A stretch of DNA of 64,000 nucleotides from Rebecca billardiae RCC1528 (taxonomy: Eukaryota; Protista; Haptophyta): the NCBI GenBank assembly GCA_965240325.2, contig OZ251223.1, positions 1,550,001-1,614,000 on the forward strand, read 5' to 3'. The translations under genes were made by a program, and so were the position numbers. This document shows positions 45,762 to 60,537 of this stretch, one piece after another (position 1 is the stretch's first letter; each line of letters begins with the position of its first letter). The notes beneath the pieces are model-generated. The model was not told where the DNA came from. It was given only the letters and a program-made list of their open reading frames with translations, and searched no databases.

Positions 45762-46469
45762 ATGTCCTCCGACGACGGGCCGCGCGCCACCCTCATCCGT
45801 GGCGCGGCGCGAGCCGTCGGCACTCTTCTGCACGCCAGCCGAGACGACCTTCCCAACGACGCCGTCGACTGCATGGGCCCCTTCACGGAGCGGCACAAGC
45901 CCATGGCGTGGGACGTGTACTGGATCCAGGACGAGCTTCCACTCCCGGAGGATCTCGCCGAGGCGATCTTCGACTTCCTGCACGTCACCAGCGAGTGCTT
46001 GCGACTCGACTCGGAGGCTATCGTCATCGCAATCGTCCTGCTCGAGCGTCTCGTCATGCGCATAGGCCGCGCCGTCCTGCGCCTGAGCACGACTCGTCCG
46101 CTGCTCGTAACCGCACTCGTCGTCGCATCCAAGTCGCTTGGACAGGACGACATCAATATGCACGCTTTCTGCGAGCAAGTGTGCTGCAACGACGAGCACC
46201 TGCGCCAGCTTGTCGAGTGCGAGCGCGCATTCACGCACGGCATCAGCTTTGATGACGCCGTGCCACCCGCCGTCTTCGAGCAGTACTGCCTCCTCCTGCT
46301 GAGCCACGGCGGCCGCAGCGCACTACCGCCGCCGCTGGACGTGGCACGGAACGCCAGCTTTGACCGCGCGTTCGAGCACCAGTGCGGCCTCGAAGCGGAT
46401 GCCGATGCGCACCAACCCGACGCCAAGAGACGATGCGTTCGCGTGAGCGCTGGTTCAAGCCGCAGCTGA
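45762..46469 (+). CDS. Cyclin-box protein (cyclin Y/Pho80-like)
   Basis: IFDFL..LRLDSEAIVIAIVLLERL..TRPLLVTALVVASK..LVECERAF matches the cyclin N-terminal box pattern. Confidence 0.78.
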   Translation: MSSDDGPRATLIRGAARAVGTLLHASRDDLPNDAVDCMGPFTERHKPMAWDVYWIQDELPLPEDLAEAIFDFLHVTSECLRLDSEAIVIAIVLLERLVMRIGRAVLRLSTTRPLLVTALVVASKSLGQDDINMHAFCEQVCCNDEHLRQLVECERAFTHGISFDDAVPPAVFEQYCLLLLSHGGRSALPPPLDVARNASFDRAFEHQCGLEADADAHQPDAKRRCVRVSAGSSRS

Positions 46470-46639: not shown

Positions 46640-46884
46640 GAGAGAGAAGGTATTACCTACTCACCAGGACAGTTTACCCCCGGCCGCCGCGCCGTCACAA
46701 AATGGCCGGCACCCGCAGGTCATTTTCGCGCATCCGCGCACACCCTCCATCCCTCCCGCCCCTCCGAAATCACCGGTGTTTGCCACCCGAAACGAGACTG
46801 GCAAATGCCGGTGATTTTCGCGCTGAAAACCATGCTTTCACAAGCGAAAATTTAGACGCCACTTCGATACACTGCGCGCTACGA
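46640..46884 (+). repeat. Left terminal inverted repeat of the PLV (245 bp)
   Basis: GAGAGAGAAGGTATTACC...CTGCGCGCTACGA is the reverse complement of 60233-60477; AG-repeat terminus as in Polintons. Confidence 0.96.
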
Positions 46885-46994
46885 TCCCGCCAAGACAAAC
46901 CGAGGGCGGCCGCCGAAGCTCAGTTCCAAGGCCGAAGCTTGCGAGCCGGCCAAGAACTACCAGTGATCCAAGGCCGAAGCTTTCCGGATCTCGC

Positions 46995-47305
46995 TTTTCA
47001 CCAGGACAGACCAGAGCCCCGCCAGTAAAAACTCGCGAGGCGACCATGATTTTACCGGTGAAGCTTCGGGTCTCAACTTTAGAGGCCACTTCGAGCACTC
47101 CGCCAGGTTTTTCCACCAGGACAGACCAGCGCCCCGCCAGTAAAAACTCGCGAGGCGACCATGATTTTACCGGCGAAGCTTCGGGTCTCAACTTTAGAGG
47201 CCACTTCGAGCACTCCGCCAGGTTTTTCCACCAGGACAGACCAGCGCCCCCACCAGTAAAAAAAGGCGACCATACCGGCGAAGCTTCGGGTCTCAACTTT
47301 AGAGA
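46995..47305 (+). repeat. Subterminal 115-bp tandem repeat, about 2.6 copies
   Basis: CACCAGGACAGACCAG recurs at 46999, 47114 and 47229; the third copy is internally deleted. Confidence 0.92.
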
Positions 47306-47508
47306 GGCCGACCATCCCCAAAACATATTTCGATCCGCACTTAAGACTTGGGCCGAGCTCGCGCGACGATGTCGGCATCCCGGGCGGCCGCCGCCGACCC
47401 TCAGCCGCCGACCCGCCATCCGCGGAAAAAACTTAGGACTTGGGGGCCGAGCCAGCGGCGGACCAAAGTGCGTTAGTTTTCGACGAAAATTTTCTGCGCC
47501 AGAGTAAA

Positions 47509-50500
47509 ATGGTCCTCCTCGACCTCGTCCGCAACCGACTCGAGCAGGATCTCCTCGACCCCAACCTGTCCATGAGGCGGCATGCCGCCGCGCGCCACGA
47601 GCTCGACCGAGACCGTCTCGAGAGGCTCTTTGCCGAGTTCAACCTGACGCCAAACGTCGATGGCAAGACCTTCGTGCTGCAGGGCAAGCGAAAGCGCATG
47701 CCCAGAACGCGCAAGAGCTGGGACCAGCTACGCCGCACGCTCGAGAGGCTTGAGAAGCACCAGCCTATGGAGACCGAGCTGAAGGCGATGGGCATCGACC
47801 TACAAGGCGGGCAGTTCACGCTCCAAGGGCGCAAGAGGCGCCTCCCTCGAACGTCCGAGGGCATGAGGAAGCTGCGCAGGCAGATTGGCTTCACCGCCAA
47901 GATGCTGAATGATGGCATGACCAGGGTGGCTGTGCATGGGCCGGAGATCACCAAGGAGACGACCTTCACCATGCCAATCTCGATGCAGGTGGAGGCGACG
48001 GCGCCTCTGCTCATGCGAGAGCAAGCGCTCTACCAGATGCCGTCGCATCTGACAAGCGCAATCCACGACTTTGTCGCTGAGACGATCGAGAAGGAGCTGA
48101 TGCGCGGAGCATCGAGTCGGCTCAAGGTGAGGGTCATCATCGAGACGCTGCATGTGAAGAGCACCAAGGGTGTCTTTGCGGTCGAGATGCCGAGCCTGCC
48201 CGAGGACGCATACCGCCGCATGATCGAACGAGGGCACCCCACCATCTCGAAGTCAAGTCGCTCCATCGCTGGCAAAGCAGTTTGGCAGCAGGAGCCGCAG
48301 CCGCTCATCGACCTCGTCAACGAGATGATCACAGACGCCTTCGAGCAGCGGCAGTCAATCTACGCAGACAAGCCAATCGCCCTCAGCCGAATGTGGATAA
48401 CCAGCGGCATGGTGACGCCTCGCGGAGCGACATCCGGGAGCAGCTACGTGAAGCTCGAAGGGCGGTGGGCGAACGCCAAGATGGGCATCGTCAACCCCAA
48501 GAACCAAGACCTCAAGTGCTTCATGGCCGCGCTGCAGGCGGCAAAGGCTGTGGAGAGCGGCGTTGCCCACCCCGAGCGGCCGAGCGTCCACCGGAAGTTC
48601 CTCGTGACCGAGCCCGAGGGTGCTGTCTACCCTGTGGACATCGGTGAGATCCGCGCATGGGAGGTCGCCAACAACCCGGCCATCACAGCCTATCGCCTCC
48701 CCGAGGACGGTGGGCAGGCGCAGGTGATGCGACTGCCGACGCCGCAGGATTTCCACAACCTGCCTCGGGTGACCCTCGGGCTCTACAAGGAGCACTGGGT
48801 CTTCTGCCGCTCCGCCGATGCCATTTGCGCAAATACCACCTATATCTACTGCGAGCTGTGTCTCAAAAAGTTCCCCTTCAACGCTCGCGCCAAGCGAGAT
48901 GAGCATCAGGAGACGTGCCATGACTCGTGGACAGTGAATTACGATGCTCAGACTGAGGAGCAAAAATTAGCCAGCTACATGACGCCTCGCGAGGCTGCGG
49001 CCGGCAAAGATTACCAGACCTCTATCGAGTACACGGGAGGCATCGAGCAGATCGTCAAGCCGCTGGTGATCCACGCCGATTTCGAGACCGTGACAATCGA
49101 CGGTGAGATGAGGCCATATGCCGTCGGCCTCATTGAGACCTGGAGCGACGGAGCCATCAAGTACGTGACCTTCACCGGGCCTGAGTGCCATATCGATCTG
49201 GTGGTCTACCTGCTGGAGACATACCCGAGCTACCTGGATACTGCCAGCAGGCACTCTGCGCTCAAGAAGCGCTCCTTCCCTCTCGAGACAAGGCAGGCTT
49301 TCGATAGTGCCACCTGCTGCTACCTCTGCGACGGCGAATTCGGCGAGACCAAAAATTTCGACTATGACCACTACACTGGCGCATATCGCGGTGCTGCTTG
49401 CACAAAGTGCAACCTGCATGCATCCACGACGAATCTCATGGCGAGCGTACCAGTATTCTTTCACAACCTCACCGGCTTTGACGCCAATTTCCTGATCCAG
49501 GCCCTCGGCTCCGAGCGGGTGCAAGGGCTGATGAACGAGATGGCCAGGATAAAGCAGAACCGCAAAACGGAGATCCTCAAGAAAAGGATCGAGGCGCAGG
49601 AGGCGCTTCTCGTCTCGTGCGCAGTAAGAGGAGACAACTATGACACTGCGCAAATCACCAGCCTCGAGCGCGAGCTCGCGAGCACGCGCCCCACCAAAGC
49701 GCTCAAAACCGACATCATTCTCCAGAACACGCAGCGACTCAAGCAGCTGACTATCGGCGGCTTTTGCTTCAAAGACACGATGGCTTTCATGAAAGAATCG
49801 CTGGAGACGCTCCTAGACAACCTGGACCCCGCGGACATGCGGAACTTGCGCTCGTTTGCCAGCGATTGGGCGCGAGCCCGAGGACTCGACCCAGAAGTCG
49901 TATTCGAGGCCGCGCGGCGCAAGGGCATTTTCCCCTACGAGATTCCGTGGCACCTCGAGCTGGATACGCCCATTGACACGCTCATCGAAAAATACCCCGA
50001 CCTCTTCTTGTCCAAGCTTAAATCGAGCTTCGGTATCGCAGGCCAGGACCAACACTTTGAGGCGGGCGAGGATGAGGCGATCGTCAAGCTCGTGCAACTC
50101 AAGTCGGCGGTCGGGCTGGAGACGATGAGAGACCTCCTCGACTGGTACCTCGCTATCGACGTTCACGGGCAGGCAGACGTCTTCACCAACTTCCAGCACC
50201 TCTTTCACACCAACTTTGGCCTGGACCCGAGCTGGTTTCTCTCGGCGCCGCAATCCTTCTTCAAGACGATGCTCAAGACCACGGGGCAAAAGATCGAGCT
50301 CTGGCAAGACTCGCGAGACGTGGATTTTGCTTCCAAGTGCATTCGAGGCGGCTACACAGATGTGCGCCACAAGCTGCAGACGGCAGGAGGAGGCGTGCAT
50401 ATCGGCTACTTTGACGCGAACAACTTGTACGGCTGGGCGATGAAGCTCAAGATGCCAGTAGGCGCGCCCTGGGATGTTGAGCCCGAGGACTTTGACCTGC

Positions 50501-51780
50501 ACGACCCCCGGTATGGGCGGCTACCGAGTGACCCCGGCGACCTCGATTTCCAAGGAGACATCGGAGCGTATGTGGAGATCGATGGCTACTTCCCGGAGCA
50601 CACGCACCAGCGCCTCAACGATTTTGTCCCGCTGCCCGAACACAGGGACGGCAAGCTCATCGCGCACCTCGACCCACGCGTCAACTATGTGTGCAGTGTG
50701 CTGAATCTGCAGAAGGCAGTCGAGCTCGGCTTTGTCGTGACAAAGGTCCATCGCGTGCTAGAGATGCATCTAGCACCGTGGATGCGCGGCTATGTCGACC
50801 AGATGGCTGCGCTGCGCGCCCAGGCGAGAAACGACTTTGAGAAGAATTTCTTCAAACTAGGCCCGAACTCGTGCTTTGGAAAAACCATGGAGCGCACGCT
50901 GCACCACCAGGATGCCGGCATCGTCTCTGGGAGTGTGATGGAGAAGCGCTTCCTCGACCCGCGCAGCCGGTACTCGAGGCATATCGGCGGCTCGCTCTTT
51001 CTCGTCTCTGGTGACAAGAAGCGCTACCTCAAGACTACTCCTGTTCAATTGGGCGCGCTCATCCTTGAGAGCTCGAAGCTGCTCATGCAGACCTTTTGGT
51101 ACGATGGCCTCAAGCCGGCGCTTCCAAACATCCAGCTCTGCATGACCGATACCGATTCCTTCATCTTCTCGGTGAACGACAAGAATTACAAGCACAAGAT
51201 GAAAGAGCTCGCGCCGCGCTGGCTTGATATGCATGGCTACCACAAGCGCAACCCGATGCATGATGCCTCGAACCAGAAAGTGGTCGGCTACTTCAAGGAC
51301 GAGTTCGCCAACGACCGCATTTGCGAGGTGGTGTGCAACGCGCCGAAATGTTACTCGGTCAGATCGACAAAGAAACAGCTACGCAAGAACAAGGGCGTGC
51401 CATACAAAGTGGTGACGAAAGCACTGCAACATGGTCACTATCGCGATATCGTCCTCCGCGAGAGGGAGACACACGTGGACTACTACCAGATTGCGGCGCG
51501 CTCGAACGTGGTGAGGATGGAACGCCAAGAGAAGGTGGCCCTCCGAAACTCGTACAACAAGGGTGTCGTGGCTGCGAACGGGCTGGAGATCCTATCGCTG
51601 GGCCACTACAAGCTCGATCCAAGGAGACACTTTGAGCGAATTATTCGGACGCATGATTGGGACACGCTCACAGCAAGGAAGGCAGCGCAAATCATGGTCG
51701 ACGAGTCTGGCTACGACGTGAGCCTCAAATGGGCCAACCGAATAATGAACGAGTTCGTCACAGCTTGCTCGACGGGCTGA
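47509..51780 (+). CDS. polB: Protein-primed family B DNA polymerase (Polinton type)
   Basis: ExoI IHADFET, ExoII FHNLTGFD, KGIFPYE, ExoIII YLAID, IRGG, motif A YFDANNLYGWAM, motif B KLGPNSCFGK, motif C TDTDS, PKCY, KGV. First ATG at 47509. Confidence 0.96.
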   Translation: MVLLDLVRNRLEQDLLDPNLSMRRHAAARHELDRDRLERLFAEFNLTPNVDGKTFVLQGKRKRMPRTRKSWDQLRRTLERLEKHQPMETELKAMGIDLQGGQFTLQGRKRRLPRTSEGMRKLRRQIGFTAKMLNDGMTRVAVHGPEITKETTFTMPISMQVEATAPLLMREQALYQMPSHLTSAIHDFVAETIEKELMRGASSRLKVRVIIETLHVKSTKGVFAVEMPSLPEDAYRRMIERGHPTISKSSRSIAGKAVWQQEPQPLIDLVNEMITDAFEQRQSIYADKPIALSRMWITSGMVTPRGATSGSSYVKLEGRWANAKMGIVNPKNQDLKCFMAALQAAKAVESGVAHPERPSVHRKFLVTEPEGAVYPVDIGEIRAWEVANNPAITAYRLPEDGGQAQVMRLPTPQDFHNLPRVTLGLYKEHWVFCRSADAICANTTYIYCELCLKKFPFNARAKRDEHQETCHDSWTVNYDAQTEEQKLASYMTPREAAAGKDYQTSIEYTGGIEQIVKPLVIHADFETVTIDGEMRPYAVGLIETWSDGAIKYVTFTGPECHIDLVVYLLETYPSYLDTASRHSALKKRSFPLETRQAFDSATCCYLCDGEFGETKNFDYDHYTGAYRGAACTKCNLHASTTNLMASVPVFFHNLTGFDANFLIQALGSERVQGLMNEMARIKQNRKTEILKKRIEAQEALLVSCAVRGDNYDTAQITSLERELASTRPTKALKTDIILQNTQRLKQLTIGGFCFKDTMAFMKESLETLLDNLDPADMRNLRSFASDWARARGLDPEVVFEAARRKGIFPYEIPWHLELDTPIDTLIEKYPDLFLSKLKSSFGIAGQDQHFEAGEDEAIVKLVQLKSAVGLETMRDLLDWYLAIDVHGQADVFTNFQHLFHTNFGLDPSWFLSAPQSFFKTMLKTTGQKIELWQDSRDVDFASKCIRGGYTDVRHKLQTAGGGVHIGYFDANNLYGWAMKLKMPVGAPWDVEPEDFDLHDPRYGRLPSDPGDLDFQGDIGAYVEIDGYFPEHTHQRLNDFVPLPEHRDGKLIAHLDPRVNYVCSVLNLQKAVELGFVVTKVHRVLEMHLAPWMRGYVDQMAALRAQARNDFEKNFFKLGPNSCFGKTMERTLHHQDAGIVSGSVMEKRFLDPRSRYSRHIGGSLFLVSGDKKRYLKTTPVQLGALILESSKLLMQTFWYDGLKPALPNIQLCMTDTDSFIFSVNDKNYKHKMKELAPRWLDMHGYHKRNPMHDASNQKVVGYFKDEFANDRICEVVCNAPKCYSVRSTKKQLRKNKGVPYKVVTKALQHGHYRDIVLRERETHVDYYQIAARSNVVRMERQEKVALRNSYNKGVVAANGLEILSLGHYKLDPRRHFERIIRTHDWDTLTARKAAQIMVDESGYDVSLKWANRIMNEFVTACSTG

Positions 51781-52675
51781 ACGATGACGACGGCGACGAG
51801 AACCGAGGTGTGGGATCGTAAGGAATGACCTTGAGGAATGCCTTCGCCGCATTTTCAGAGACGTTAAAATCTCTGGCCAGCATTTTGCTCAGAGCTGTGC
51901 GCGATTCTTTCGGGTTGGCCTGCATCATGAGTATGATGGCATCGATGTTGTCGTCAAGGTGGTCTCTGGCTTCATTTCCGAAGAGTGGTTTTGAGGCCTG
52001 GGTGCCAGCCGTCTGCTGGGATGGCTGCTCCTGTGTCCCCATGGAGCGTCTCTTCGGACCAGCCTGCGTGCCAATCGCCGGGCGCTCTGGCATCCCCTGA
52101 GTACCAGTTGAACGCCTCTTTGGGCCACCAGCCTGCGTGCCAATCGCCGGGCGTTCAGCCGGAGGAGGCATCTCCTGAGTAGCAATCGACCGTCTCTTGG
52201 TGCTCGCCTGAGTACCTGTAGAGTGCTGCTCTGGCCGCAGGCCCCGAGCGACTCTGTCTGTCCCAATACCAATCGATCGCCGCTCTGGCACGGCACTTGT
52301 AGAGACAGGCAGAGGCTGCTTGTTGACTATCAGCCTGCTCATTGCTTGGCCAGACGCATCGCGTGTAGGCAGGCGAATCTGCCGAGCCCGAAATTCGTTC
52401 ACACCATCGCTAAAGGGTAGCAGCGCATCGATGGAAGGCACTCGCCTGCCCACTGCAGCCGTCTGGTTGGTGGGCGGCGGTCGCGTTGGCTTGATTAGTG
52501 GCTTCATCACAATCGGCTCGGCCGAATACGTCAATCGTCTCGAAGACGGCGTAGGCACGGCTCCGCTCCAGTATTCTTTTCCGCGGCTGTGAAAGGAGCC
52601 GCCGTAGGGTTTGCCCTCGAGGCGAAAGTGCGTGGTCTTGGTCGGCAGGAATCGCTCGCGATGTATGGCCTGCAT
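51758..52675 (-). CDS. PLV protein of unknown function with repeated (G/A)TQ motifs
   Basis: Intact 305-aa ORF; HSTGTQA, RRSIATQE, AIGTQA (x2), RRSTGTQG, RRSMGTQE, TAGTQA; helical C-terminus. Confidence 0.75.
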   Translation of the reverse strand: MQAIHRERFLPTKTTHFRLEGKPYGGSFHSRGKEYWSGAVPTPSSRRLTYSAEPIVMKPLIKPTRPPPTNQTAAVGRRVPSIDALLPFSDGVNEFRARQIRLPTRDASGQAMSRLIVNKQPLPVSTSAVPERRSIGIGTDRVARGLRPEQHSTGTQASTKRRSIATQEMPPPAERPAIGTQAGGPKRRSTGTQGMPERPAIGTQAGPKRRSMGTQEQPSQQTAGTQASKPLFGNEARDHLDDNIDAIILMMQANPKESRTALSKMLARDFNVSENAAKAFLKVIPYDPTPRFSSPSSSFSPSSKL

Positions 52676-52681
52676 CTATAA

Positions 52682-53371
52682 TCATAGTAATAATTTATTC
52701 CACTCTCTGTGGAGCGCACCATGGTCTGCATTAAGAAATAAAAAAGTGTGCGGATCGCCATCGCCAAAAATGTACTGATACACTGTAGCAAAGTCTGAGC
52801 GAGGCATCATGATCAATTCAGAGCGCAGAGCCTCTAGCTCCTTGGTATTGTTGGGCTTGAACACGGTCACATGCGAGAATAATTTTCGTATAGTCAGCGG
52901 CACCGATATGTAACCCTGTGATATAACAATGATACTGAGTTTGTAGTGTCGCCTGTTCTGAACGATACGCGAATACAGGCGCTGCAAATTTGGGTCTTTT
53001 AGTGACGCAGCAAAATCATCTATAATAAGGAGGGTCGGCAAAGGCATATTCGACTCGGCAATGCTGAGCACATTCTGAAGTGTCTCTGCCGTCAGCTCGT
53101 GGTATACATATTGAAGCGCGGCTAGCGGGGAATTTTGGAAGCTGTCCACCGAGGTGCGAGGAGCCACGAAGATTACGTTGGCAAAGACTCGTTTATAGGG
53201 CCCAGTGATCAAGCCCACTACCTGGCTGGATTTGCCGCTACGGGGTGGGCCAAAGACGCCCCAATGAAAGCTCGTGTTTGGGAGAGGCTCTGGCAGGCCT
53301 GGCTTTAGAGGCTTGTCCGCACTGATTCTAGGCAGCGGGAGCTCTATGTGATGCGCGATCTCGTTGATCAT
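52682..53371 (-). CDS. A32-like (FtsK/HerA superfamily) genome packaging ATPase
   Basis: Walker A GPPRSGKS, Walker B LLIIDD, A32-type RRHYKLSIIVISQ. Confidence 0.92.
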   Translation of the reverse strand: MINEIAHHIELPLPRISADKPLKPGLPEPLPNTSFHWGVFGPPRSGKSSQVVGLITGPYKRVFANVIFVAPRTSVDSFQNSPLAALQYVYHELTAETLQNVLSIAESNMPLPTLLIIDDFAASLKDPNLQRLYSRIVQNRRHYKLSIIVISQGYISVPLTIRKLFSHVTVFKPNNTKELEALRSELIMMPRSDFATVYQYIFGDGDPHTFLFLNADHGALHREWNKLLL

Positions 53372-53697
53372 ATAAACCGCATGATTCTTTTTTGGGATGT
53401 CTTGACAGGGGTCACCTCCGGGGTCACCGCCTCTGGGGTCACCTCTTCCTCGCCTGCCAGCTCGATCGATTCGACCGGCTGCCTGACAATGCTCGGCGGC
53501 GTCTTGCTTGGTGGGCGCCTGGGTGTGGGTGCTTTTGGCCCGACCTCGCCGCCGATTTCTTCGAGCTTGGCTTTCGCATCCTCTGCCAGCTTGGTGTATG
53601 TGGCCGCATGTGTCTCATATGTCACAACCTGGCGTTTCAGGCGCATGCGCTCCGTCGCCAGCTGCTGCGCCTCGCTGCGTGTCTTTTTATTCTCCAT
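53368..53697 (-). CDS. Small coiled-coil PLV protein
   Basis: 109-aa ORF overlapping the ATPase start by 4 nt; N-terminal heptad pattern and EVTP repeats. Confidence 0.6.
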   Translation of the reverse strand: MENKKTRSEAQQLATERMRLKRQVVTYETHAATYTKLAEDAKAKLEEIGGEVGPKAPTPRRPPSKTPPSIVRQPVESIELAGEEEVTPEAVTPEVTPVKTSQKRIMRFI

Positions 53698-53810
53698 CTT
53701 CTATATGCAAGCAGAGAATATTTTGGATTTCAGCCGAGAGGATGCATTGGCATGGTACATCTCCAAGAAGCTCGGCACGAGCGATGATGAAATAATATCG
53801 GCACTAATTC

Positions 53811-54545
53811 ATGCTGCACCTGCACACAAGTCAGGGCGATGTGTTCCCACTGGGCCGAGCCAAGACGAGCTGCGTGAATTTCACACTGAGCCACCCAATC
53901 ATGGCGGCAAGCGATGAGGTCATATTTGTATCTGTCGATAGCCTGTGTGTGCCTAATACGCGCTATGCCGTAGACAGCTCGAATAATAGCGTGGGTGCCG
54001 CCTCCGACTGGGGCGACACAACGCTCACGCTCACCCCGAAGAATTATACCGCTAGCACGCTTGTCACAGAGATCAACTCGGCATTGTCTAGCATCAACGT
54101 GACTGCTGCTTTCGACTCGGCCACTGGCAAGCTCACATTCTCGACGACACATGGTTTCGACACCACCATCAAAGGCACGAGCAGCGCTTCGCGTGTGCTC
54201 GGCCTCTGTCGCACAGACTTGGTGATACCGGCCAGCGGCAGTATAGAGGCACCCGGCGTGGTGGACCTGCTCAGCCGAGGCTTTGCGCTCACCTGCGAAG
54301 GGCTGGATGTCAAGAGCAGAGACTCGACCAACTCTGGCTCATCGAGCAACATTTTATGTGTGGTGCACATCGACAAGCCGTTCGGCCAGACTGTGCTGTA
54401 CACTGATGCGAACAATGACATTTTGCAGTGCAACCGCCGGAGTATACAAAATATCGAGCTCCAGCTGATCGATCTCGAGACCATGCAGCCGGTGGAGCTG
54501 AATGGAGCCGAGTGGTCTGTCAACCTGAAATTCCAAATTTCTTAA
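53811..54545 (+). CDS. Minor capsid (penton-like, single jelly-roll) protein
   Basis: NFTLSHPI..SVDSLCVPNT.Y.V..NN, LTPKNY..LVTEIN, FDSATGKLTF, SNILC, ELNGAEWSVNLKF pattern of PLV/Polinton mCP; directly upstream of the MCP. Confidence 0.8.
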   Translation: MLHLHTSQGDVFPLGRAKTSCVNFTLSHPIMAASDEVIFVSVDSLCVPNTRYAVDSSNNSVGAASDWGDTTLTLTPKNYTASTLVTEINSALSSINVTAAFDSATGKLTFSTTHGFDTTIKGTSSASRVLGLCRTDLVIPASGSIEAPGVVDLLSRGFALTCEGLDVKSRDSTNSGSSSNILCVVHIDKPFGQTVLYTDANNDILQCNRRSIQNIELQLIDLETMQPVELNGAEWSVNLKFQIS

Positions 54546-54570
54546 GAAATATTTCCTGGCCATAGTACTT

Positions 54571-55905
54571 ATGGCTTACGCCGGCAAGCGTGTGACGAAC
54601 GATATTCGCGGTGATGACGCGATGGTGCTCGAGCAGGAGGAGACGGCTCCGAGCTACTATGACTTCTCAAACCCCAAGCCCGTCGCCGTTGGCGCTGCCT
54701 ACAAGAGGTCGACGATATATGCAGGCCCGTCGTCTAGCTTCACAAGTGGCCAGGTGATGCAATTCGATATCCCGACTGGCACGCCCGGCGCGATGATGGA
54801 CCCGTCGCAGACAGTCCTGCAGTTTACAATCCACAACACCTCTGGCCAGCCTCTCACGCTCTCAAGGTCTGCATACTCGTGCATCGAGCGCATTGACGCC
54901 TACCACGGCAGCCAGATGATCGCAAGCACGGGCAAGGCAGGCCTGCTGCACAATGTCTTGCTCGACTTCCAGTCGGGCGCATCTTCGGGCTTCTCCACCG
55001 GCAGCATGCTGGGCTGTGCCGACTACGAGATGCCTGCCGCATATGCAGCCGCCGATGTTGAGAGCGCGCTTTACCCGACAACCGGTGAGACAATTGCCAA
55101 CAATGCCCGGAAGACGGTTACCCTCCCACTCGCGTACGTGTTTGGCGCTCTGTGTGGTAAGGCGGTGCCGCTCTCTGAGCTGCACCAAGGCCTTCGTGTG
55201 GACATCCATGTGGCCAACATGCTCGACTTTGGCGTGTATGATGCCGACCCAGGCACTACCTCCCCCACGCTTGAGACGGTCAAGATGCAGCTCGGCATGG
55301 TCATGCTGAGCGATAGTGCCTACACCAAGATGGTTCGCTCGCTCGATCGGATCTACATCCCATCGATGTCCTACCTCCATGCCTCCCACTCGGTGGCTGC
55401 AAACACGTCGACGGCCTGGCAGTTGCCGTTCCGCCTGGCCTCGGTCAACATGATCATCCTGGCTGCGGTGCCGAATACCAGTGAGAACGCATTTGGTGGC
55501 GACATCACGACTCGCACGCGAGCGGCGCTCACCAAGTGGCAGTTGCGCATCGGCTCTACCCTCGTGCCGGATCAGCCAGTCTCTGCCACCCACGGCGGCG
55601 CAGAGACGCGCGCTGAGCTCGTTCGCGCCTTCAACGCGCTCGGCATTGCCGATTATGCCTCTCGCGTGAGCGGCACGGCCTTTGACGATGCGGCTTTCTG
55701 CATCGCCTTTAACACGAGCGCCTTCTCGCAGTCGGACATCCTCTTCGACGGCCGCCGTCTCGATACCGAGTACGCCATCTTTGAGGCGGACACGAACAGC
55801 GGGGCATCTTTCAAGTGGCATGCCTGGGCGCTCCACGATGTGATGATGGAGGTCTCACAGAACCAGCTTAATTTCGCCATTTACTTTCGCTCTATATATA
55901 CATGA
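54571..55905 (+). CDS. Major capsid protein (double jelly-roll, PLV type)
   Basis: 444 aa, beta-rich; SFTSGQVMQFDIP..MDPSQTVLQF, SCIERI, KAVPL..LRVDI, WQLRIG..VPDQPV, FCIAFN. Size and context fit a PLV MCP. Confidence 0.82.
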   Translation: MAYAGKRVTNDIRGDDAMVLEQEETAPSYYDFSNPKPVAVGAAYKRSTIYAGPSSSFTSGQVMQFDIPTGTPGAMMDPSQTVLQFTIHNTSGQPLTLSRSAYSCIERIDAYHGSQMIASTGKAGLLHNVLLDFQSGASSGFSTGSMLGCADYEMPAAYAAADVESALYPTTGETIANNARKTVTLPLAYVFGALCGKAVPLSELHQGLRVDIHVANMLDFGVYDADPGTTSPTLETVKMQLGMVMLSDSAYTKMVRSLDRIYIPSMSYLHASHSVAANTSTAWQLPFRLASVNMIILAAVPNTSENAFGGDITTRTRAALTKWQLRIGSTLVPDQPVSATHGGAETRAELVRAFNALGIADYASRVSGTAFDDAAFCIAFNTSAFSQSDILFDGRRLDTEYAIFEADTNSGASFKWHAWALHDVMMEVSQNQLNFAIYFRSIYT

Positions 55906-56195
55906 GTTTTCTAGGTAGACTCGTTAGAGATGCGCGCGGAAAGATCGGCGGGCTGGCTAACACCGCCCGAAGGCTCGGCAGACCTATCAGCTCTGCAATC
56001 CATCACCTAAAGCCCTGTGTAGACAAGGTGGGTGGGGACGTCACCCAATTCTTGAACGAAGTCGATCGCACCGAAGGCCTCGGCGATATCGCCTCACCTT
56101 ATACGGCCGCGGGAAGGCGGGCCATACAGCGTGGGCGTCAGATCTCCAACCGTCTGGACCAGGGGGCTCGCAGAGCCGACCGGTTTCTACGCTAG
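55902..56195 (+). CDS. Small basic putative virion/core protein
   Basis: 97 aa, Arg/Gly-rich, amphipathic N-terminus MSFLGRLVRDARGKIGGL; ATGA overlap with the MCP stop. Confidence 0.6.
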   Translation: MSFLGRLVRDARGKIGGLANTARRLGRPISSAIHHLKPCVDKVGGDVTQFLNEVDRTEGLGDIASPYTAAGRRAIQRGRQISNRLDQGARRADRFLR

Positions 56196-56804
56196 GCGGT
56201 GCTGCTCTCGTAAAAAGCGGATTGGGCGCGTGAACGCGTCTGCGCTGATGCGCCCGACCGTCTTCCGACTGCCCCCTCGCTGAGTGAGCGAGAGTGCCGA
56301 CACGATATCGCCTGGAGAGCGGACATCGAATTGTGTCTTTGGTAAGACCTTTCCGATATCCTTCAACCCAGCACCTTTTTGGGATGTATGCACCTGAGCT
56401 GCGCCAGAGTTTTCGGCCAGGTGCCCGCCCAAGCTGTGGCCCATGGCTGACGTCACGCCATATTTTCGCCGCACAATCTCGACCAGCTTTCGGGCTCGCT
56501 GGTGGCGCGGGTCATATACAGAGAAGCCGAGCGCGAGTGGCACATCAGACACTGCCCAGTCGGCAAAGCTGACACTGCCTCGAAATAGGACTAGCGGCCG
56601 GCCTGATGCTATGTGCACCAATACCTTGTCTTCGTCAGACGAGAGTCTGACGTCGAGCCGGTACCGCGGCTTTACGTGCTCGCGCGCCTGCTCGAGCGTC
56701 ATGTATGATGCTTCTAGCAACATGCGCCTGTCTTTTTGGAGGGTCGTCCCCGAATCGAATAGCATGCGCTCGCCTTCCTGGGTGGAGATGGTGGGGATAT
56801 TCAT
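56187..56804 (-). CDS. Class 3 lipase (alpha/beta hydrolase)
   Basis: VLFRGS..DW, nucleophile elbow GHSLGG, GDIVS, C-terminal His. Confidence 0.88.
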   Translation of the reverse strand: MNIPTISTQEGERMLFDSGTTLQKDRRMLLEASYMTLEQAREHVKPRYRLDVRLSSDEDKVLVHIASGRPLVLFRGSVSFADWAVSDVPLALGFSVYDPRHQRARKLVEIVRRKYGVTSAMGHSLGGHLAENSGAAQVHTSQKGAGLKDIGKVLPKTQFDVRSPGDIVSALSLTQRGGSRKTVGRISADAFTRPIRFLREQHRLA

Positions 56805-56818
56805 ATTACTGCGCAGTT

Positions 56819-57451
56819 TTATTTGCGAGGCCTGAGCATCCTGAACCCGTGGGCCGAGCGGACTGGGTGCCCGCTCGTGGCGTCTACAATGTTTGTGACC
56901 TGCGCTCGCCTGTCTCTCTGGCTACGCGTGCGACGGATGGCTCCAGTAGGGATGACCGAGGTTTGCTCCACAGCCGGCTGACTGCCGCCTCTGTGAGTGA
57001 TCGACCCCTTGTCATTGAAGACGTACCAGTTCCCCTCTGTTTGCCTCCGCACCACCGCCATGAGCAGAGCCAGGAGCGGCCGAATCTCAGGCCATGGTGC
57101 CCCGCTTTGTCGCCACTCTTTATCCCGGAGAGGCTTGACAAAACTGTAGCCTGGATTCGTGCGAGCGAGAAGCCGATCCTCCACATCTTTGGCCAGGTTG
57201 GGGCTCGTCACAAGGAATGCCAGTAGCTTGAAGCTGCCCGCTGCGTATGGCATGCTGTGCCTGTATCCCGCGAAGAGCCGACTCCGAATATTTTTGGTCA
57301 TTCCCATTTTAAACAGGGGTCTCTTGCCCGCCCATGTTGGGTGGATCACATACACGCCGGCAATCTTTTTGTCCTTGTCAGCGAAGCCCGCATTTTGCAG
57401 CGCAGCCTTAAACTGCGTATACTCCTTCTTTAGCGGGTCAGTGATACGCAT
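56819..57451 (-). CDS. GIY-YIG superfamily (T5orf172-like) nuclease
   Basis: AGVYVI..LFKMGMTKNIRSRL..Y..VEDRLL..KEW. The start is placed at ATG 57451 because the longer ORF overlaps the opposite-strand gene. Confidence 0.65.
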   Translation of the reverse strand: MRITDPLKKEYTQFKAALQNAGFADKDKKIAGVYVIHPTWAGKRPLFKMGMTKNIRSRLFAGYRHSMPYAAGSFKLLAFLVTSPNLAKDVEDRLLARTNPGYSFVKPLRDKEWRQSGAPWPEIRPLLALLMAVVRRQTEGNWYVFNDKGSITHRGGSQPAVEQTSVIPTGAIRRTRSQRDRRAQVTNIVDATSGHPVRSAHGFRMLRPRK

Positions 57452-57473
57452 ATTATTATATGGCTTATAATAT

Positions 57474-59594
57474 ATGGCGAGCATCTTCGGCCTAGTTTCA
57501 TCATCATCATCATCAATCAGCTGGAGTGGCGAGGTGCTCACGTACCCAGCAAGCTCGTCTATAACTATCAATTTCGTTCCGCCACTGCCCAACGAGGACC
57601 TGAAAATACGGGTTTCCCATCCCAGGCATATATTCACTGTGACGAGCGCGAGCATAACTCCATCGAGCGCCACTGTAGTCTGGACAGCGGACAATTATGA
57701 GAAGGTAGTGAATCGCCAATATGATCACGAGTATAAGCCTTATTTCAGCGTGTACTCCGGCGATAGCCTACTGACCAGCTTTGATCACACGGGTACGCTA
57801 TATCATGGATCGATCGAGTCTGGCAATCTGATTACCCAGTCCATGCTCACTGGCCCCACAGTGGCTCATTTCCCGCTGACCGCAGACCTGGTTGATACCA
57901 CTCCCCGCGCTCAGAGCCTCGTGCCGGCTGGCACGTTTGCCTTTGCTGAAGACTCCGCTCGCTCAACGGCCAATGCGAGCACGCTCACGCTCCAGACACC
58001 GGGGCACGACTGGCGGGATTTTAGTGCGGCTTTCTACCTGAAGGGCTGCCCAGGCCTGAGTAAGCTCTCACTAGGCGGTGGGCTCTCGTACGCGAGCGCT
58101 GAGCTGGACTCGAACATCATCGCTAGTAGCAGTGTCGGCTTTGTAGACGACGTGAGCCAGATGGTCCCAAGCGGTGTCTGGACACACTTTGTCATCTCGC
58201 AGGAAACCAACTCTTTTGAGGCGAATATCGAGATCTATGCGGACCAAACGCTCCTCCACTCTCGCACTATTGGCCAACAAACGGACCCAGATTTCAAGCG
58301 GATTTCGCTCTACTACCCACTCGTCGCCACGCTTGACGACCAGGCTGCGCTCGCGCAGCTGAGCATATATCCATACGCTCTCGATGCGGCCGGCCGCCTG
58401 GCGCATGCGCAGTCGTGGCTTGGATATGTCCTGCGGTACACATGGTTGCTCGATGGAAACTTGCTCGAGGTAGACGGTGCCGCCGCCGCGCTGCAGCCCA
58501 CAAATGGCGATTATGTGATGACGAGCGGTTACCTAGAGATGCAAAATACTAGTACATTGCATCTCGGTCTGAATGAAATGCCCGACATGCAGGGCAGCGA
58601 GCGCTTCTCGCTTGCGGCATGGACCTACCGCCCGAATAACACCGATGCCGTTCGCATGTGGCTCCTCGAGGATGGCGTCACCGACTTCACTTTCGAGATC
58701 ATCGGTGGCCAGCTGCGCTCTGAGCTGGGCGCGACAGCGTTTCAGGACTTGGCAGGACCGGCACATGGAGAGTGGCACCACATTGCGCAAACAGTGGATG
58801 GCACCACGTCCAAAGTGTACATCGATGGTGTGCTGGTGAGTACTACCACGCTACCAGCCAGCTTCACCCCGCTGCTCAGCATCATCGGGCACAGAACCGC
58901 GCCTATGACCGCAGGCGTGCGACTGTATGCCATGACAATCGCGCGCGGGATCATCGATGTGCCGACGGTGATGAATTTGTACTCGCCGATGCAAGGCTTA
59001 AATCCATTTGCCAGCTGGCCGATGACGACGAATTTGACCGATGATGTTGGCAGCTATGCTTTCACTGTATCCAGCGGCACTGCAACGCACACCAATGGCT
59101 ATGCTGATCTCAGCAGCTCGGTTGTGATGACAGCGCCAGTACCGACGCAGACGATGACGATGTTTGGGTTCTCAGCGTGGGTTTATGTCGACAACGTCTC
59201 AGGCTCATTCAAACTCGAGTGGCGCAATACAGGCTCGAAGGTCGTTCATTTTTACATCTACCGCAACGGCGTTGGGAACACCGCGTTTGGGTTCGATATC
59301 ACAGGGCAGTCTGGTAATTTATACGACCGAGTCGATGTTTTGCCGCTGAACACCTGGTATCATATTGCTTGGTCTTATACAGTGGGAGGCAACATGGAGG
59401 CCTGGTTGAACAAGGTATCGCTCGGCGTTGAGGCCATGAGCGCCACTGCCGTGGGCGATGTCAACGAAATTTACGCGAGCACGCCCCCAAGCGGCGGTCC
59501 ATTCAAGTGTGCTGCAGTGCGCTTCTACACCGAAGGTGCGATCACGCAGGCCGAGGTCGATCGCGACTATGACCTCTTCACGCCTCCGCCATAG
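57474..59594 (+). CDS. Triple LamG/concanavalin A-like protein, putative receptor-binding fibre
   Basis: Three repeats opening AHFPLTADLVD, YTWLLDGNLLE and ASWPMTTNLTD, each with F(S)..(W/F) and W.H signatures (GVWTHF, GEWHHIAQTVDG..KVYIDG, NTWYHIAW). Confidence 0.8.
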   Translation: MASIFGLVSSSSSSISWSGEVLTYPASSSITINFVPPLPNEDLKIRVSHPRHIFTVTSASITPSSATVVWTADNYEKVVNRQYDHEYKPYFSVYSGDSLLTSFDHTGTLYHGSIESGNLITQSMLTGPTVAHFPLTADLVDTTPRAQSLVPAGTFAFAEDSARSTANASTLTLQTPGHDWRDFSAAFYLKGCPGLSKLSLGGGLSYASAELDSNIIASSSVGFVDDVSQMVPSGVWTHFVISQETNSFEANIEIYADQTLLHSRTIGQQTDPDFKRISLYYPLVATLDDQAALAQLSIYPYALDAAGRLAHAQSWLGYVLRYTWLLDGNLLEVDGAAAALQPTNGDYVMTSGYLEMQNTSTLHLGLNEMPDMQGSERFSLAAWTYRPNNTDAVRMWLLEDGVTDFTFEIIGGQLRSELGATAFQDLAGPAHGEWHHIAQTVDGTTSKVYIDGVLVSTTTLPASFTPLLSIIGHRTAPMTAGVRLYAMTIARGIIDVPTVMNLYSPMQGLNPFASWPMTTNLTDDVGSYAFTVSSGTATHTNGYADLSSSVVMTAPVPTQTMTMFGFSAWVYVDNVSGSFKLEWRNTGSKVVHFYIYRNGVGNTAFGFDITGQSGNLYDRVDVLPLNTWYHIAWSYTVGGNMEAWLNKVSLGVEAMSATAVGDVNEIYASTPPSGGPFKCAAVRFYTEGAITQAEVDRDYDLFTPPP

Positions 59595-59615
59595 ACTAAA
59601 AATCATGTCATATAA

Positions 59616-59855
59616 ATGAAAGCTTCGACCCGCAAGGGTAAGCGATACGAGTACAAGGGTGTGCATTTTGGTGCTAAAGGCGGTAAGACGTATATAGACC
59701 ATGGTGATGATGCCATCAAAAAGGCCTGGATCGCTAGGCATCGCGTGAATAAAAACTGGAACAACCCCAAATCTGGGATTTACTACAGCCGTCATTTGCT
59801 GTGGGGCCCGACACCGAGCCTGCAGAAAAACCTGGAGATACTACATGGACGATAG
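59616..59855 (+). CDS. Tlr6F-like protein (conserved in PLVs and virophages)
   Basis: KRY..VHFGA.G..YIDH.D..KKAWIARH..W..YSRHLLW pattern. Confidence 0.8.
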   Translation: MKASTRKGKRYEYKGVHFGAKGGKTYIDHGDDAIKKAWIARHRVNKNWNNPKSGIYYSRHLLWGPTPSLQKNLEILHGR

Positions 59856-60158
59856 GCCGCCTCCATCGGCCGTCTTCAGCGCCGAGTGCGTGCTCAGCTG
59901 CATATCTGAATTGCTATCTTCCTTGTTTTGCCGAGGATGACGCTCGCGCCAGAGTGCCTGACGTTTCTTGAGCAGCTCCCGGTTGCATGCGATGCAGATC
60001 TTGGCCCGGTAAACACGCTTGTTCTTGCGACGATAGTTCATCTCGAGTGCGGGCACGTATTTCTCACATGCTTTACAGTGGGCGTACAGGCCCTTGAGCT
60101 CGGCTGGATTCTCCGGGCCCATGCGACCATCCTCGACGGTCGTGAAGGTGGTCTTCAT
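59841..60158 (-). CDS. Small zinc-ribbon (CxxC..CxxC) basic protein
   Basis: HCKACEK..Y.RK..KICIACNRE..WRERH; first ATG at 60158. Confidence 0.65.
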   Translation of the reverse strand: MKTTFTTVEDGRMGPENPAELKGLYAHCKACEKYVPALEMNYRRKNKRVYRAKICIACNRELLKKRQALWRERHPRQNKEDSNSDMQLSTHSALKTADGGGLSSM

Positions 60159-60232
60159 ACTTAACACACCGCAGAAATTATTTAGCCACCGACCACCCGC
60201 TCGCCACTATGGCGGTTGGGTGGTGGCTGGCC

Positions 60233-60477
60233 TCGTAGCGCGCAGTGTATCGAAGTGGCGTCTAAATTTTCGCTTGTGAAAGCATGGTTTTCAGCGCGAA
60301 AATCACCGGCATTTGCCAGTCTCGTTTCGGGTGGCAAACACCGGTGATTTCGGAGGGGCGGGAGGGATGGAGGGTGTGCGCGGATGCGCGAAAATGACCT
60401 GCGGGTGCCGGCCATTTTGTGACGGCGCGGCGGCCGGGGGTAAACTGTCCTGGTGAGTAGGTAATACCTTCTCTCTC
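60233..60477 (-). repeat. Right terminal inverted repeat of the PLV (245 bp)
   Basis: Reverse complement of 46640-46884. Confidence 0.96.
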
Positions 60478-60489
60478 GTCAAAGTAATA

Positions 60490-60537
60490 ATATATATATG
60501 TATATATATACATATATATGTATATATATATATATAT
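60490..60537. repeat. Imperfect (TA)n microsatellite just outside the right PLV end
   Basis: tatatatatgtatatatatacatatatatg... Confidence 0.9.

What the first reader, a model, noticed from the sequence alone, without database searches (positions are those of the whole stretch)
46640..60477. Apparently intact, compact endogenous Polinton-like virus with a hybrid gene set
Seen: 245-bp TIRs with no mismatch that I could find, and 11 tightly packed intronless ORFs with no visible stops or frameshifts. They cover pPolB, A32 ATPase, mCP, MCP, lipase, GIY-YIG, a LamG protein, Tlr6F and unknowns. Known: these are hallmark genes of Polintons/PLVs, and haptophyte PLVs such as Gezel-14T replicate with a giant virus. 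Inference: this is a recent, possibly reactivatable provirus. It pairs a Polinton-style polymerase with a PLV-style capsid/lipase/Tlr6F module and lacks a stand-alone maturation protease, helicase and integrase, so it may be an undescribed minimal lineage.
Basis: partly seen in the sequence, partly recalled or inferred. Interest (0 to 1): 0.92.

Follow-up and report, generated by a model that had tools for sequence, protein, structure and literature searches.

The report
Intact endogenous Polinton-like virus, PgVV type
This is a complete 13.8-kb copy of a small alga-type DNA virus (a Polinton-like virus) sitting between two host genes; it is well preserved and from a little-sampled branch, but its "hybrid" gene set is one already described for this virus group.

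Summary
There is a 13,838-bp insert at 46640-60477 with perfect 245-nt terminal inverted repeats. It has lower GC than the host, is 90% coding, and none of its genes is broken.

I count 12 genes, not 11:
- protein-primed PolB;
- packaging ATPase;
- penton;
- double jelly-roll capsid protein (AlphaFold pLDDT 91; best fold match is the PBCV-1 capsid protein);
- class-3 lipase;
- LamG protein;
- Tlr6f (59616-59855, Pfam DUF5754);
- a zinc-ribbon protein;
- a T5orf172/GIY-YIG-like protein, supported only weakly;
- three unknowns.

No integrase, protease or helicase was found, and there is no target-site duplication.

The nearest named capsid relatives are endogenous elements of the haptophytes Diacronema lutheri and Pavlovales sp. 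CCMP2436 (31-33% identity). The D. lutheri units share seven genes with this insert but carry an SF1 helicase instead of PolB.

A second variant, 98.9% identical and from another sequencing run, differs almost only at synonymous sites (pN/pS 0.06). The lineage therefore evolves as a working virus.

The literature already reports that Polinton-like viruses lack the protease, that several pair PolB with no RVE integrase, and that replication modules swap often. I file this as a new member of a known kind. The integrase-free integration is the one open point.

The parts
46640..60477 (.). Whole integrated PLV genome, 13,838 bp
   Evidence: Bounded by perfect TIRs. GC drop. Host genes lie on both sides: a cyclin-like ORF at 45627-46469 and a CRAL/TRIO gene at 61614-63068. 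No TSD of 4 bp or more.
46640..46884 (+). Left terminal inverted repeat. It starts with a (GA)4 reiteration and contains a 19-nt internal hairpin-forming repeat (46767-46817).
46995..47304 (.). Subterminal non-coding 115-bp tandem repeat, 2.8 copies. Each copy carries the 12-nt word that also occurs in both TIRs.
47509..51780 (+). [quoted passage not shown] It carries an Endonuclease VII-like zinc-finger insert between Exo I and Exo II.
   Evidence: Pfam DNA_pol_B_2 at 1.6e-12 and Endonuclease_7 at 2.8e-4. 1138 relatives, the best 27-33% identical, including Guillardia theta and animal Polinton polymerases. Exo I-III, motifs A, B, C and KxY are all present.
51758..52675 (-). orf305: basic, repeat-rich protein of unknown function, in the slot next to the ATPase
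   Evidence: No family hit. Only a weak N-terminal match to the gene in the same position in L012/L013.
52682..53371 (-). A32/FtsK-type DNA-packaging ATPase, 229 aa
   Evidence: PHROG 2666 at 1.2e-12 and Pox_A32 at 1.2e-4. Walker A and B motifs and the RH motif are conserved. 38-40% identical to the ATPases of related PLVs.
53368..53697 (-). orf109: small charged protein of unknown function
   Evidence: In the same position as small ORFs in related loci. No sequence relative found.
53811..54545 (+). Minor capsid (penton) protein, 244 aa
   Evidence: Lies immediately upstream of the MCP in all relatives, 25-38% identical. The family profile hits the PBCV-1 penton P1 (8h2i_bG) at E 7.3e-4. Pfam DUF5901 at 8.4e-6, just under the cut-off.
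54571..55905 (+). Major capsid protein, 444 aa, double jelly-roll
   Evidence: AlphaFold2 with an 81-sequence alignment gave pLDDT 91 and pTM 0.89. Foldseek against PDB: PBCV-1 Vp54 at E 2.5e-18, TM 0.63-0.65, then iridovirus, EhV-201, Sputnik and mavirus MCPs. BFVD top hit at E 8.5e-25. 326 sequence relatives, the best 37% identical.
55902..56195 (+). orf97: small basic protein of unknown function
   Evidence: 52% identical to the ORF in the same position in L002. No family hit.
56187..56804 (-). Class-3 lipase-like alpha/beta hydrolase, 205 aa, nucleophile elbow GHSLGG
   Evidence: The family alignment has invariant Ser and Asp. The profile hits PDB lipases (7ubz at 3.8e-5; Thermomyces-type lipases at about 5e-3). 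35-50% identical to the PLV homologues, one of which carries Pfam Phospholipase-like.
56819..57442 (-). orf207 (the ORF is open to 57694, 291 aa): T5orf172/GIY-YIG-like domain protein. The assignment is weak.
   Evidence: Homologues are in L003 and in D. lutheri, 35-37% identical. T5orf172 matches only at E 0.16, in 2 of 3 members. The single-sequence structure model failed with pLDDT 36.
57474..59594 (+). 706-aa protein with two Laminin_G_3 (concanavalin-like lectin) matches; candidate attachment or fibre protein
   Evidence: Pfam Laminin_G_3 at 1.8e-21, 2 stretches. No homologue in any related locus. In D. lutheri the matching slot holds a protein with three F5/8 type C domains.
59616..59855 (+). 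Tlr6f-family protein, 79 aa
   Evidence: Pfam DUF5754 at E 9.8e-9, 35.6 bits against a cut-off of 27.4. PF19058 is equated with Tlr6f in PMC12220804. Homologues are present in L014 and in the D. lutheri units.
59841..60158 (-). orf108/105: small CxxC...CxxC zinc-ribbon protein
   Evidence: 42% identical over 55 aa to an ORF next to the helicase in the D. lutheri units. Only weak family matches (PHROG 2340 'endonuclease' at 5.8e-4; DksA/TraR-type zinc finger at 0.057).
60233..60477 (-). Right terminal inverted repeat

Best explanation
The region is a complete, integrated genome of a Polinton-like virus of the PgVV-like (Gezel-like, Aquintoviricetes) kind. It sits in an intergenic region of an unidentified intron-poor eukaryote with about 70% GC.

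Shown:
- a morphogenetic module: double jelly-roll MCP, penton and A32-type packaging ATPase;
- a class-3 lipase, a Tlr6f protein and a lectin-domain protein;
- a Polinton-type protein-primed PolB;
- perfect TIRs.

Inferred mode of action:
- As a linear genome it would be copied from both ends by the PolB using a protein primer. The (GA)4 reiteration at each terminus fits the slide-back initiation known from protein-primed replicons.
- The DNA would be pumped by the ATPase into an icosahedral capsid of MCP trimers and penton pentamers.
- The lipase, which is a virion component in PgVV, and the LamG protein would serve entry and attachment.
- Every gene has an AT-rich box about 15-25 nt before its start codon. 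This implies short leaders and a dedicated promoter type, possibly read by a co-infecting giant virus, as in PgVV.

The replication module was exchanged relative to its nearest known kin, which use an SF1 helicase protein.

Integration was not made by an element-encoded RVE or tyrosine recombinase, since none is present and there is no TSD. Host double-strand-break repair or an enzyme supplied in trans is the likeliest route.
For: - TIRs and boundaries.
- MCP fold.
- Penton.
- ATPase.
- Lipase.
- Tlr6f.
- LamG.
- PolB family and intact catalytic motifs.
- Conserved synteny (X, ATPase and a small ORF on one strand; penton, MCP and more on the other) in nine related loci.
- Seven genes shared with the D. 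lutheri units, which carry an SF1 helicase instead of PolB.
- Named relatives in haptophytes. D. lutheri integrated PLVs are already placed among PgVV-like PLVs (Roitman et al. preprint).
- Purifying selection between this copy and the L001 variant: 33 differences in 2956 nt, 27.5 synonymous and 5.5 non-synonymous, pN/pS 0.064, P 6e-12.
- AT-rich boxes: the 25 nt before the 12 starts average 70% AT against 43% for the element, and 0 of 20,000 random sets reach that value.
- PgVV virion content and its dependence on a giant virus.
Against: - No read-level evidence that the junctions are real.
- The host is not identified. The best named match for a host kinase is only 35-40% identical.
- The mimivirus-type early promoter word used by PgVV is absent from the element, so dependence on a giant virus is only an analogy.
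- PGVV05, one of the five PgVV-like core genes, could not be tested.
- Five small or repetitive ORFs have no assigned function, so a novel recombinase cannot be strictly excluded.
- No relative was found in IMG/VR by pattern scans. No free-virus form has therefore been seen.
Confidence: 0.82

Rival explanations
1. Assembly artefact: a free linear viral genome from the culture was joined by mistake into a host contig, so there is no provirus.
For: - There is no TSD.
- A low-complexity AT microsatellite abuts the right end; repeats of this kind attract mis-joins.
- The TIRs are perfect, as expected for a replicating virus.
- A 1.1%-divergent variant occurs as a separate short contig in another run.
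Against: - Two independent false joins would be needed.
- Both flanks carry ordinary host genes, and the GC profile changes exactly at the TIR ends.
- Relatives are integrated in two annotated haptophyte genomes.
Confidence: 0.06
2. A Maverick/Polinton-type self-synthesising transposon of a new minimal lineage. On this reading it moves within the nucleus and is not a virus with an extracellular phase.
For: - The PolB is of Polinton type. The contig carrying one of the closest PolB relatives (L006) also holds an RVE integrase and an A32 ATPase.
- TIRs are present.
Against: - There is no RVE integrase, no adenain-like protease and no TSD.
- The capsid genes group with PLV genes, not with those of the PolB-bearing contigs.
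- The capsid genes are under strong purifying selection, and a virion-type lipase and a lectin protein are kept. This argues for particle formation.
- PolB-bearing PLVs without RVE have been described since 2015.
Confidence: 0.08
3. A dead-end insertion: a viral genome captured once by host DNA repair. It looks intact only because it is young, and it has no route out of the chromosome.
For: No recombinase gene, no TSD, a single copy in the 64-kb window, and an insertion next to a simple repeat.
Against: - A protein-primed replicon with intact TIRs can in principle be copied from an integrated template without excision, as proposed for Polintons (established model, not tested here).
- D. lutheri keeps several related units, two of them head to tail. 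Persistence in genomes is therefore recurrent in this clade.
- The purifying selection measured acts on the lineage, but it does not show that this particular copy is active.
Confidence: 0.3
4. A retained antiviral locus: the host keeps the provirus because it lowers giant-virus yield, as with virophage and PLV defence.
For: - The analogy with mavirus in Cafeteria and with PLVs in Tetraselmis and cryptophytes (abstracts listed).
- Intact genes and AT-rich viral-type promoters.
Against: - No giant-virus promoter word was found.
- There is no evidence of any giant virus for this unidentified host.
- The intactness is equally well explained by recent insertion.
Confidence: 0.12

Closest known systems
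PgVV / Gezel-14T and the PgVV-like PLVs (class Aquintoviricetes)
   Same: - TIR-flanked linear genome.
- DJR MCP, penton and A32 ATPase.
- Tlr6f.
- A class-3-type lipase with a GHSxGG elbow.
- A GIY-YIG-type gene.
- A long putative attachment protein.
- No maturation protease.
- Association with haptophytes.
   Different: - PgVV replicates with TVpol (a polymerase-SF3 helicase) and encodes an OLV11-type tyrosine recombinase. This element has a protein-primed PolB and no recombinase.
- It is 13.8 kb against about 20 kb, and 57% GC against 36%.
- It has a LamG protein instead of the tail-fibre-like Ltf.
- The mimivirus early promoter word is absent.
Integrated PLVs of Diacronema lutheri (JAGTXO010000002.1) and Pavlovales sp. 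CCMP2436
   Same: These are the nearest named MCP relatives (31-33%). The D. lutheri units share ATPase 39%, penton 27%, lipase 46%, orf207 36%, the zinc-ribbon protein 42% and Tlr6f 36%, in the same core gene order.
   Different: - The D. lutheri units are about 18.7 kb.
- They carry a 1289-aa SF1 helicase protein instead of PolB.
- They carry a protein with three discoidin domains instead of LamG.
- Two units lie head to tail.
- Identities are low enough to put them in a different genus or higher rank.
PolB-bearing PLVs of Guillardia theta and Monoraphidium neglectum (Yutin et al. 2015)
   Same: A PLV-type capsid module combined with a protein-primed PolB. The best named PolB hit is a G. theta protein, 29% identical.
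   Different: The G. theta elements encode a tyrosine recombinase and the M. neglectum element an RVE integrase. This element has neither.
Maverick/Polinton elements (Polintoviricetes)
   Same: Protein-primed PolB with the Endonuclease VII-like zinc insert, TIRs, an A32 ATPase, DJR and penton capsid genes, and a similar size.
   Different: - No RVE integrase, no adenain-type protease and no 5-6-bp TSD.
- The capsid and ATPase sequences are only distantly related: 23% identity to the ATPases on the PolB-relative contigs L006 and L009, against 38-40% to PLV ATPases.
Endogenous mavirus-type virophages of Cafeteria
   Same: An integrated, TIR-flanked small DJR virus with lower GC than its host, and genes preceded by short AT-rich promoters.
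   Different: Virophages have a cysteine protease, an RVE integrase and a virophage-type MCP. The mavirus MCP is a weaker fold match (TM 0.49) than PBCV-1 Vp54 (TM 0.63).

Membership tests
Polinton-like viruses (sensu Yutin et al. 2015) | Double jelly-roll major capsid protein of PLV type | tested here: met
   Model with pLDDT 91. The best Foldseek matches are DJR capsids. 326 sequence relatives, among them endogenous haptophyte PLV proteins.
Polinton-like viruses (sensu Yutin et al. 2015) | Minor capsid (penton) protein | tested here: met
   Conserved ORF directly upstream of the MCP. Profile hit to the PBCV-1 penton P1 at E 7.3e-4. DUF5901 just under the cut-off. No confident structure model was made.
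Polinton-like viruses (sensu Yutin et al. 2015) | A32/FtsK-type packaging ATPase | tested here: met
Polinton-like viruses (sensu Yutin et al. 2015) | No capsid maturation protease | tested here: met
   No protease family in any ORF with Pfam, PHROGs or NCBIfam. The absence holds only at HMMER sensitivity.
Polinton-like viruses (sensu Yutin et al. 2015) | Long terminal inverted repeats and a genome of about 14-40 kb | tested here: met
   245-nt perfect TIRs. At 13,838 bp it is at or just below the quoted lower bound.
PgVV-like PLVs (core set of Roitman et al.) | Tlr6F present | tested here: met
   DUF5754 at E 9.8e-9, above the cut-off.
PgVV-like PLVs (core set of Roitman et al.) | PGVV05-cluster protein present | not testable with these tools
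   No named hit for any of orf305, orf109 or orf97, and no PGVV05 sequence was obtainable through the tools. I had PgVV ORF05 in mind and wrote out no letters.
PgVV-like PLVs (core set of Roitman et al.) | MCP falls in the PgVV-like clade in a phylogeny | tested here: inconclusive
   The nearest named relatives are D. lutheri and Pavlovales proteins, and D. lutheri PLVs are listed among PgVV-like PLVs. No tree with reference PLVs was built.
Maverick/Polinton | Protein-primed family B polymerase | tested here: met
Maverick/Polinton | Retroviral-type (RVE) integrase | tested here: not met
   No rve hit in any ORF. One of the contigs fetched for the closest PolB relatives (L006) does carry rve.
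Maverick/Polinton | Adenain-like cysteine protease | tested here: not met
Maverick/Polinton | 5-6-bp target-site duplication | tested here: not met
   No shared word of 4 bp or more at the junctions.
Virophages (Lavidaviridae/Maveriviricetes) | Virophage-type MCP plus cysteine protease | tested here: not met
   Sputnik and mavirus MCPs rank below chlorovirus and iridovirus MCPs (TM 0.49-0.56 against 0.63). No protease was found.
GIY-YIG nuclease superfamily (for orf207) | Significant match to a GIY-YIG clan family, or the fold | tested here: inconclusive
   T5orf172 only at E 0.16, in 2 of 3 homologues. No PDB hit. The model is unusable at pLDDT 36. The motif pattern G-x-Y ... K-x-G-x-T ... 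R ... E ... EW is conserved.

The most novel reading that the evidence does not exclude
This could be a PLV lineage that enters and persists in chromosomes with no recombinase of its own. It might use its T5orf172/GIY-YIG-like protein, the zinc-ribbon protein or the PolB/terminal-protein complex together with host end-joining. That would be a route of integration different from the RVE and tyrosine-recombinase routes known for Polintons, PLVs and virophages. The D. lutheri relatives also showed no integrase in the ORFs I scanned, so the trait may be clade-wide.
Probability: 0.12. Interest if true: 0.7.

Novelty: new member of a known kind. Interest (0 to 1): 0.4.

Why it matters
It adds a complete, undamaged reference genome for a poorly sampled branch of haptophyte-type Polinton-like viruses. 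Its capsid protein is at most 37% identical to anything among about 15 billion public proteins. The host is not close to any annotated genome.

Together with the Diacronema units, it gives a clean natural example of a replication-module swap (protein-primed PolB against SF1 helicase) on a shared capsid, lipase and Tlr6f backbone. It also shows a swap of the lectin-type attachment protein (LamG against discoidin).

The synonymous-dominated divergence from a second variant shows that such proviruses belong to lineages that still function as viruses. The missing integrase and missing target-site duplication point to an unexplained way into the chromosome.

None of this changes the current picture of PLVs; it fills it in.

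Tried and rejected
- **Word-indexed protein search with the MCP:** it found only the element's own copy in another run. The exhaustive search was needed.
- **IMG/VR:** scans with the MCP, an ATPase alignment and the TIR end found no relative.
- **The single metagenome scan:** it gave one distant locus, L011.
- **PDB sequence searches:** searches with single proteins (MCP, PolB, orf291, lipase, penton, orf108) were uninformative. Only the family profiles worked.
- **Structure of orf207:** I did not seek a structure for it by any other route and folded the window's protein alone, which failed (pLDDT 36). I therefore ran no fold search on it. The same locus-derived row was later used only for alignment and HMM searches, which address a different question.
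- **Host identification:** it failed. Exact look-ups found only unnamed Logan entries. A kinase search gave 59% identity to unnamed contigs and 35-40% to named species. There is no Rfam hit in the window, and the run accessions appear in no paper.
- **Mimivirus early promoter word:** absent from the element.
- **Bacterial promoter and terminator scan:** irrelevant.
- **Rejected readings:** Polinton membership (no RVE, no protease, no TSD); virophage membership; a second PLV fragment elsewhere in the window (none); viral remnants in the low-GC flanks (none).

Full report
**1. Observation**

The inverted repeat is real and exact. The arms are 46640-46884 and 60233-60477, 245 nt and 100% complementary. 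They delimit 13,838 bp. It is one of only two long inverted repeats in the window.

GC falls from 0.65-0.78 in the host to 0.53-0.61 inside the element. Third-codon-position GC is 0.56-0.78 in the element's genes, against 0.72-0.90 in seven host genes, six of which are at 0.85 or more.

The surrounding DNA encodes ordinary eukaryotic proteins as uninterrupted ORFs: a P450, an ABC1 kinase, a PNGase, a SEP-UBX protein and a papain-like protease. The host is therefore an intron-poor eukaryote of about 70% GC.

The insert lies between a cyclin-like ORF (45627-46469) and a CRAL/TRIO gene (61614-63068). No direct repeat of 4 bp or more flanks it. An AT/ATGT microsatellite abuts the right end.

**2. 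Genes**

Twelve ORFs cover 90% of the element. None is interrupted.

- **PolB (47509-51780).** It matches Pfam DNA_pol_B_2 and carries an Endonuclease VII-like zinc insert. It has more than 1100 relatives at 27-33% identity. These include a Guillardia theta protein and animal Polinton polymerases. Exo I-III and polymerase motifs A, B, C and KxY are all present.
- **ATPase (52682-53371).** It has Walker A and B motifs. It matches a packaging-ATPase PHROG at 1e-12 and Pox_A32 weakly.
- **Major capsid protein (54571-55905, 444 aa).** It had no family or PDB sequence match. The exhaustive search found 326 relatives, the best 37% identical. With 80 of them as alignment, AlphaFold2 gave pLDDT 91 and pTM 0.89. 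Foldseek put PBCV-1 Vp54 first (E 2.5e-18, TM 0.63-0.65), followed by other double jelly-roll capsid proteins.
- **Penton (53811-54545).** This ORF is conserved directly upstream of the MCP in every relative. Its family profile hits the PBCV-1 penton P1 at E 7e-4.
- **Lipase (56187-56804).** It has a GHSLGG elbow with invariant Ser and Asp. Its profile hits class-3 lipases in the PDB.
- **Lectin-domain protein (57474-59594).** It has two Laminin_G_3 matches.
- **Tlr6f (59616-59855).** This 79-aa ORF is easily overlooked. It matches Pfam DUF5754 above the curated cut-off. PMC12220804 equates that family with Tlr6f.
- **Zinc-ribbon protein (59841-60158).** It has a homologue in Diacronema.
- **The '291-aa GIY-YIG' ORF.** It most likely starts at 57442 and is 207 aa long. 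That start leaves a 31-nt AT-rich divergent promoter shared with the LamG gene, and it matches where the homologues begin. Its assignment is weak. T5orf172 (GIY-YIG clan) matches only at E 0.16, in two of three homologues. The conserved motif pattern fits. No structure could be obtained.
- **orf305, orf109 and orf97.** These remain unknown.

No integrase, tyrosine recombinase, protease or helicase was detected in any ORF.

**3. Relatives**

A 2956-bp contig from run ERR14847151 (L001) is the same element at 98.88% identity, with 33 mismatches and no gaps. Computed gene by gene and then summed as counts, the differences are 27.5 synonymous and 5.5 non-synonymous. That gives pN/pS 0.064 and a binomial P of 6e-12. 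The capsid module has therefore diverged under strong purifying selection.

In that copy, the frame that is open in the window's MCP holds one stop. I give the count only. Divergence is uneven (penton pS 0.10, MCP 0.025), which hints at recombination.

A contig from the neighbouring run ERR14847148 (L002) carries a different member of the family. It has the same order of penton, MCP, orf97 and lipase, at 37-52% identity.

Metagenomic contigs L003 and L012-L016 share a core block. A variable gene, the ATPase and a small ORF lie on one strand; the penton and the MCP lie on the other.

Cluster look-ups named three relatives. These are proteins of Pavlovales sp. CCMP2436 and of Diacronema lutheri, 31-33% identical.

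The D. lutheri locus holds two units 18,704 bp apart, head to tail. They share seven genes with this element: ATPase 39%, penton 27%, MCP 31%, lipase 46%, orf207 36%, zinc-ribbon protein 42% and Tlr6f 36%. They differ in two ways:
- They carry a 1289-aa SF1 helicase protein instead of PolB.
- They carry a protein with three discoidin domains where this element has LamG.

By contrast, one of the contigs fetched for the closest PolB relatives (L006) also holds an RVE integrase, and their ATPases are only 23% identical to this one. The capsid side and the replication side therefore have different histories.

**4. How it most likely works**

Shown: a full virion module, an entry-type lipase, a lectin-domain protein, a protein-primed polymerase and perfect TIRs.

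Inferred from established knowledge of protein-primed replicons (phi29, PRD1, adenovirus): replication starts at both termini. The (GA)4 reiteration at the very ends is the kind of terminal repeat that allows slide-back after priming.

A 12-nt word occurs in both TIRs and in each of the 2.8 subterminal 115-bp repeats. It may be a protein-binding site.

All twelve genes have an AT-rich box about 15-25 nt before the start codon. The 25 nt before the starts average 70% AT, against 43% for the element, and none of 20,000 random sets reaches that value. AATA-type words dominate these stretches. This implies short leaders and one shared promoter type.

In PgVV, transcription depends on the giant virus PgV. 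The mimivirus early word used there is absent here, so helper dependence is only an analogy.

Integration without a recombinase or a TSD is best explained by host break repair or by an enzyme acting in trans. This is inference.

**5. Comparison with what is known**

- Yutin et al. 2015 defined PLVs by MCP, mCP and ATPase. They noted that none has the maturation protease, that several encode a protein-primed polymerase while only one has RVE, and that lipase, GIY-YIG and Tlr6f recur.
- Roitman et al. list MCP, mCP, A32, PGVV05 and Tlr6F as the PgVV-like core. They found the lipase in virions, and they include integrated D. lutheri PLVs.
- Bellas & Sommaruga 2026 report that pPolB/helicase switches are common in every PLV group.

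The 'hybrid' gene set is therefore the known PLV pattern. The element passes the PLV tests. It fails three Polinton tests (RVE, protease, TSD). It is most like PgVV-like PLVs, with one core gene, PGVV05, untestable here.

**6. Verdict**

This is a genuine, coding-intact endogenous PLV and a new member of a known kind.

Its distinctive points are:
- a size at the lower bound for PLVs;
- a PolB module on a haptophyte-type capsid backbone;
- no recognisable integration gene;
- an unsampled host.

Interest is moderate (0.4).

**7. Limits and one slip**

- The host was not identified.
- No read-level check of the junctions was possible.
- No reference-anchored phylogeny was built.
- Slip: while debugging a script I worked out for myself, from two product lengths, roughly where the single stop of the L001 copy lies. 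That place is not given in this report, the notes or any script output.

Noticed in passing
window 37821-38191 and 38514-38884: A 371-nt perfect inverted repeat with a 322-nt spacer in host DNA. It could be a foldback element or a long-read assembly artefact.
   Followed up: no
window 40444-40607: An 82-bp GC-rich unit repeated twice in tandem at 100% identity.
   Followed up: no
window 60490-60537: An AT/ATGT microsatellite directly beside the right TIR, in a genome of about 70% GC. It may be a fragile site used for insertion, or a cause of mis-assembly.
   Followed up: partly
window 46661-46672, 46998-47239 and the right TIR: A 12-nt word occurs once in each TIR and once in each 115-bp subterminal repeat. 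It is a candidate binding site for a replication or transcription factor.
   Followed up: partly
L017/L018 (Diacronema lutheri JAGTXO010000002.1, about 1.611-1.651 Mb): Two related PLV units lie head to tail, 18,704 bp apart. In them the orf207-like domain opens a 1754-codon ORF that continues into 300-nt repeats and three F5/8 type C domains.
   Followed up: partly
L001 against window 53513-56468: Synonymous divergence between the two variants is four times higher in the penton gene than in the MCP gene (pS 0.10 against 0.025). This suggests recombination between variants.
   Followed up: partly
L012:1081-2571: In a related metagenomic PLV, the variable gene next to the ATPase is 496 aa long and ends in a DnaJ domain (E 7.6e-5). 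Its N-terminus weakly resembles orf305.
   Followed up: no
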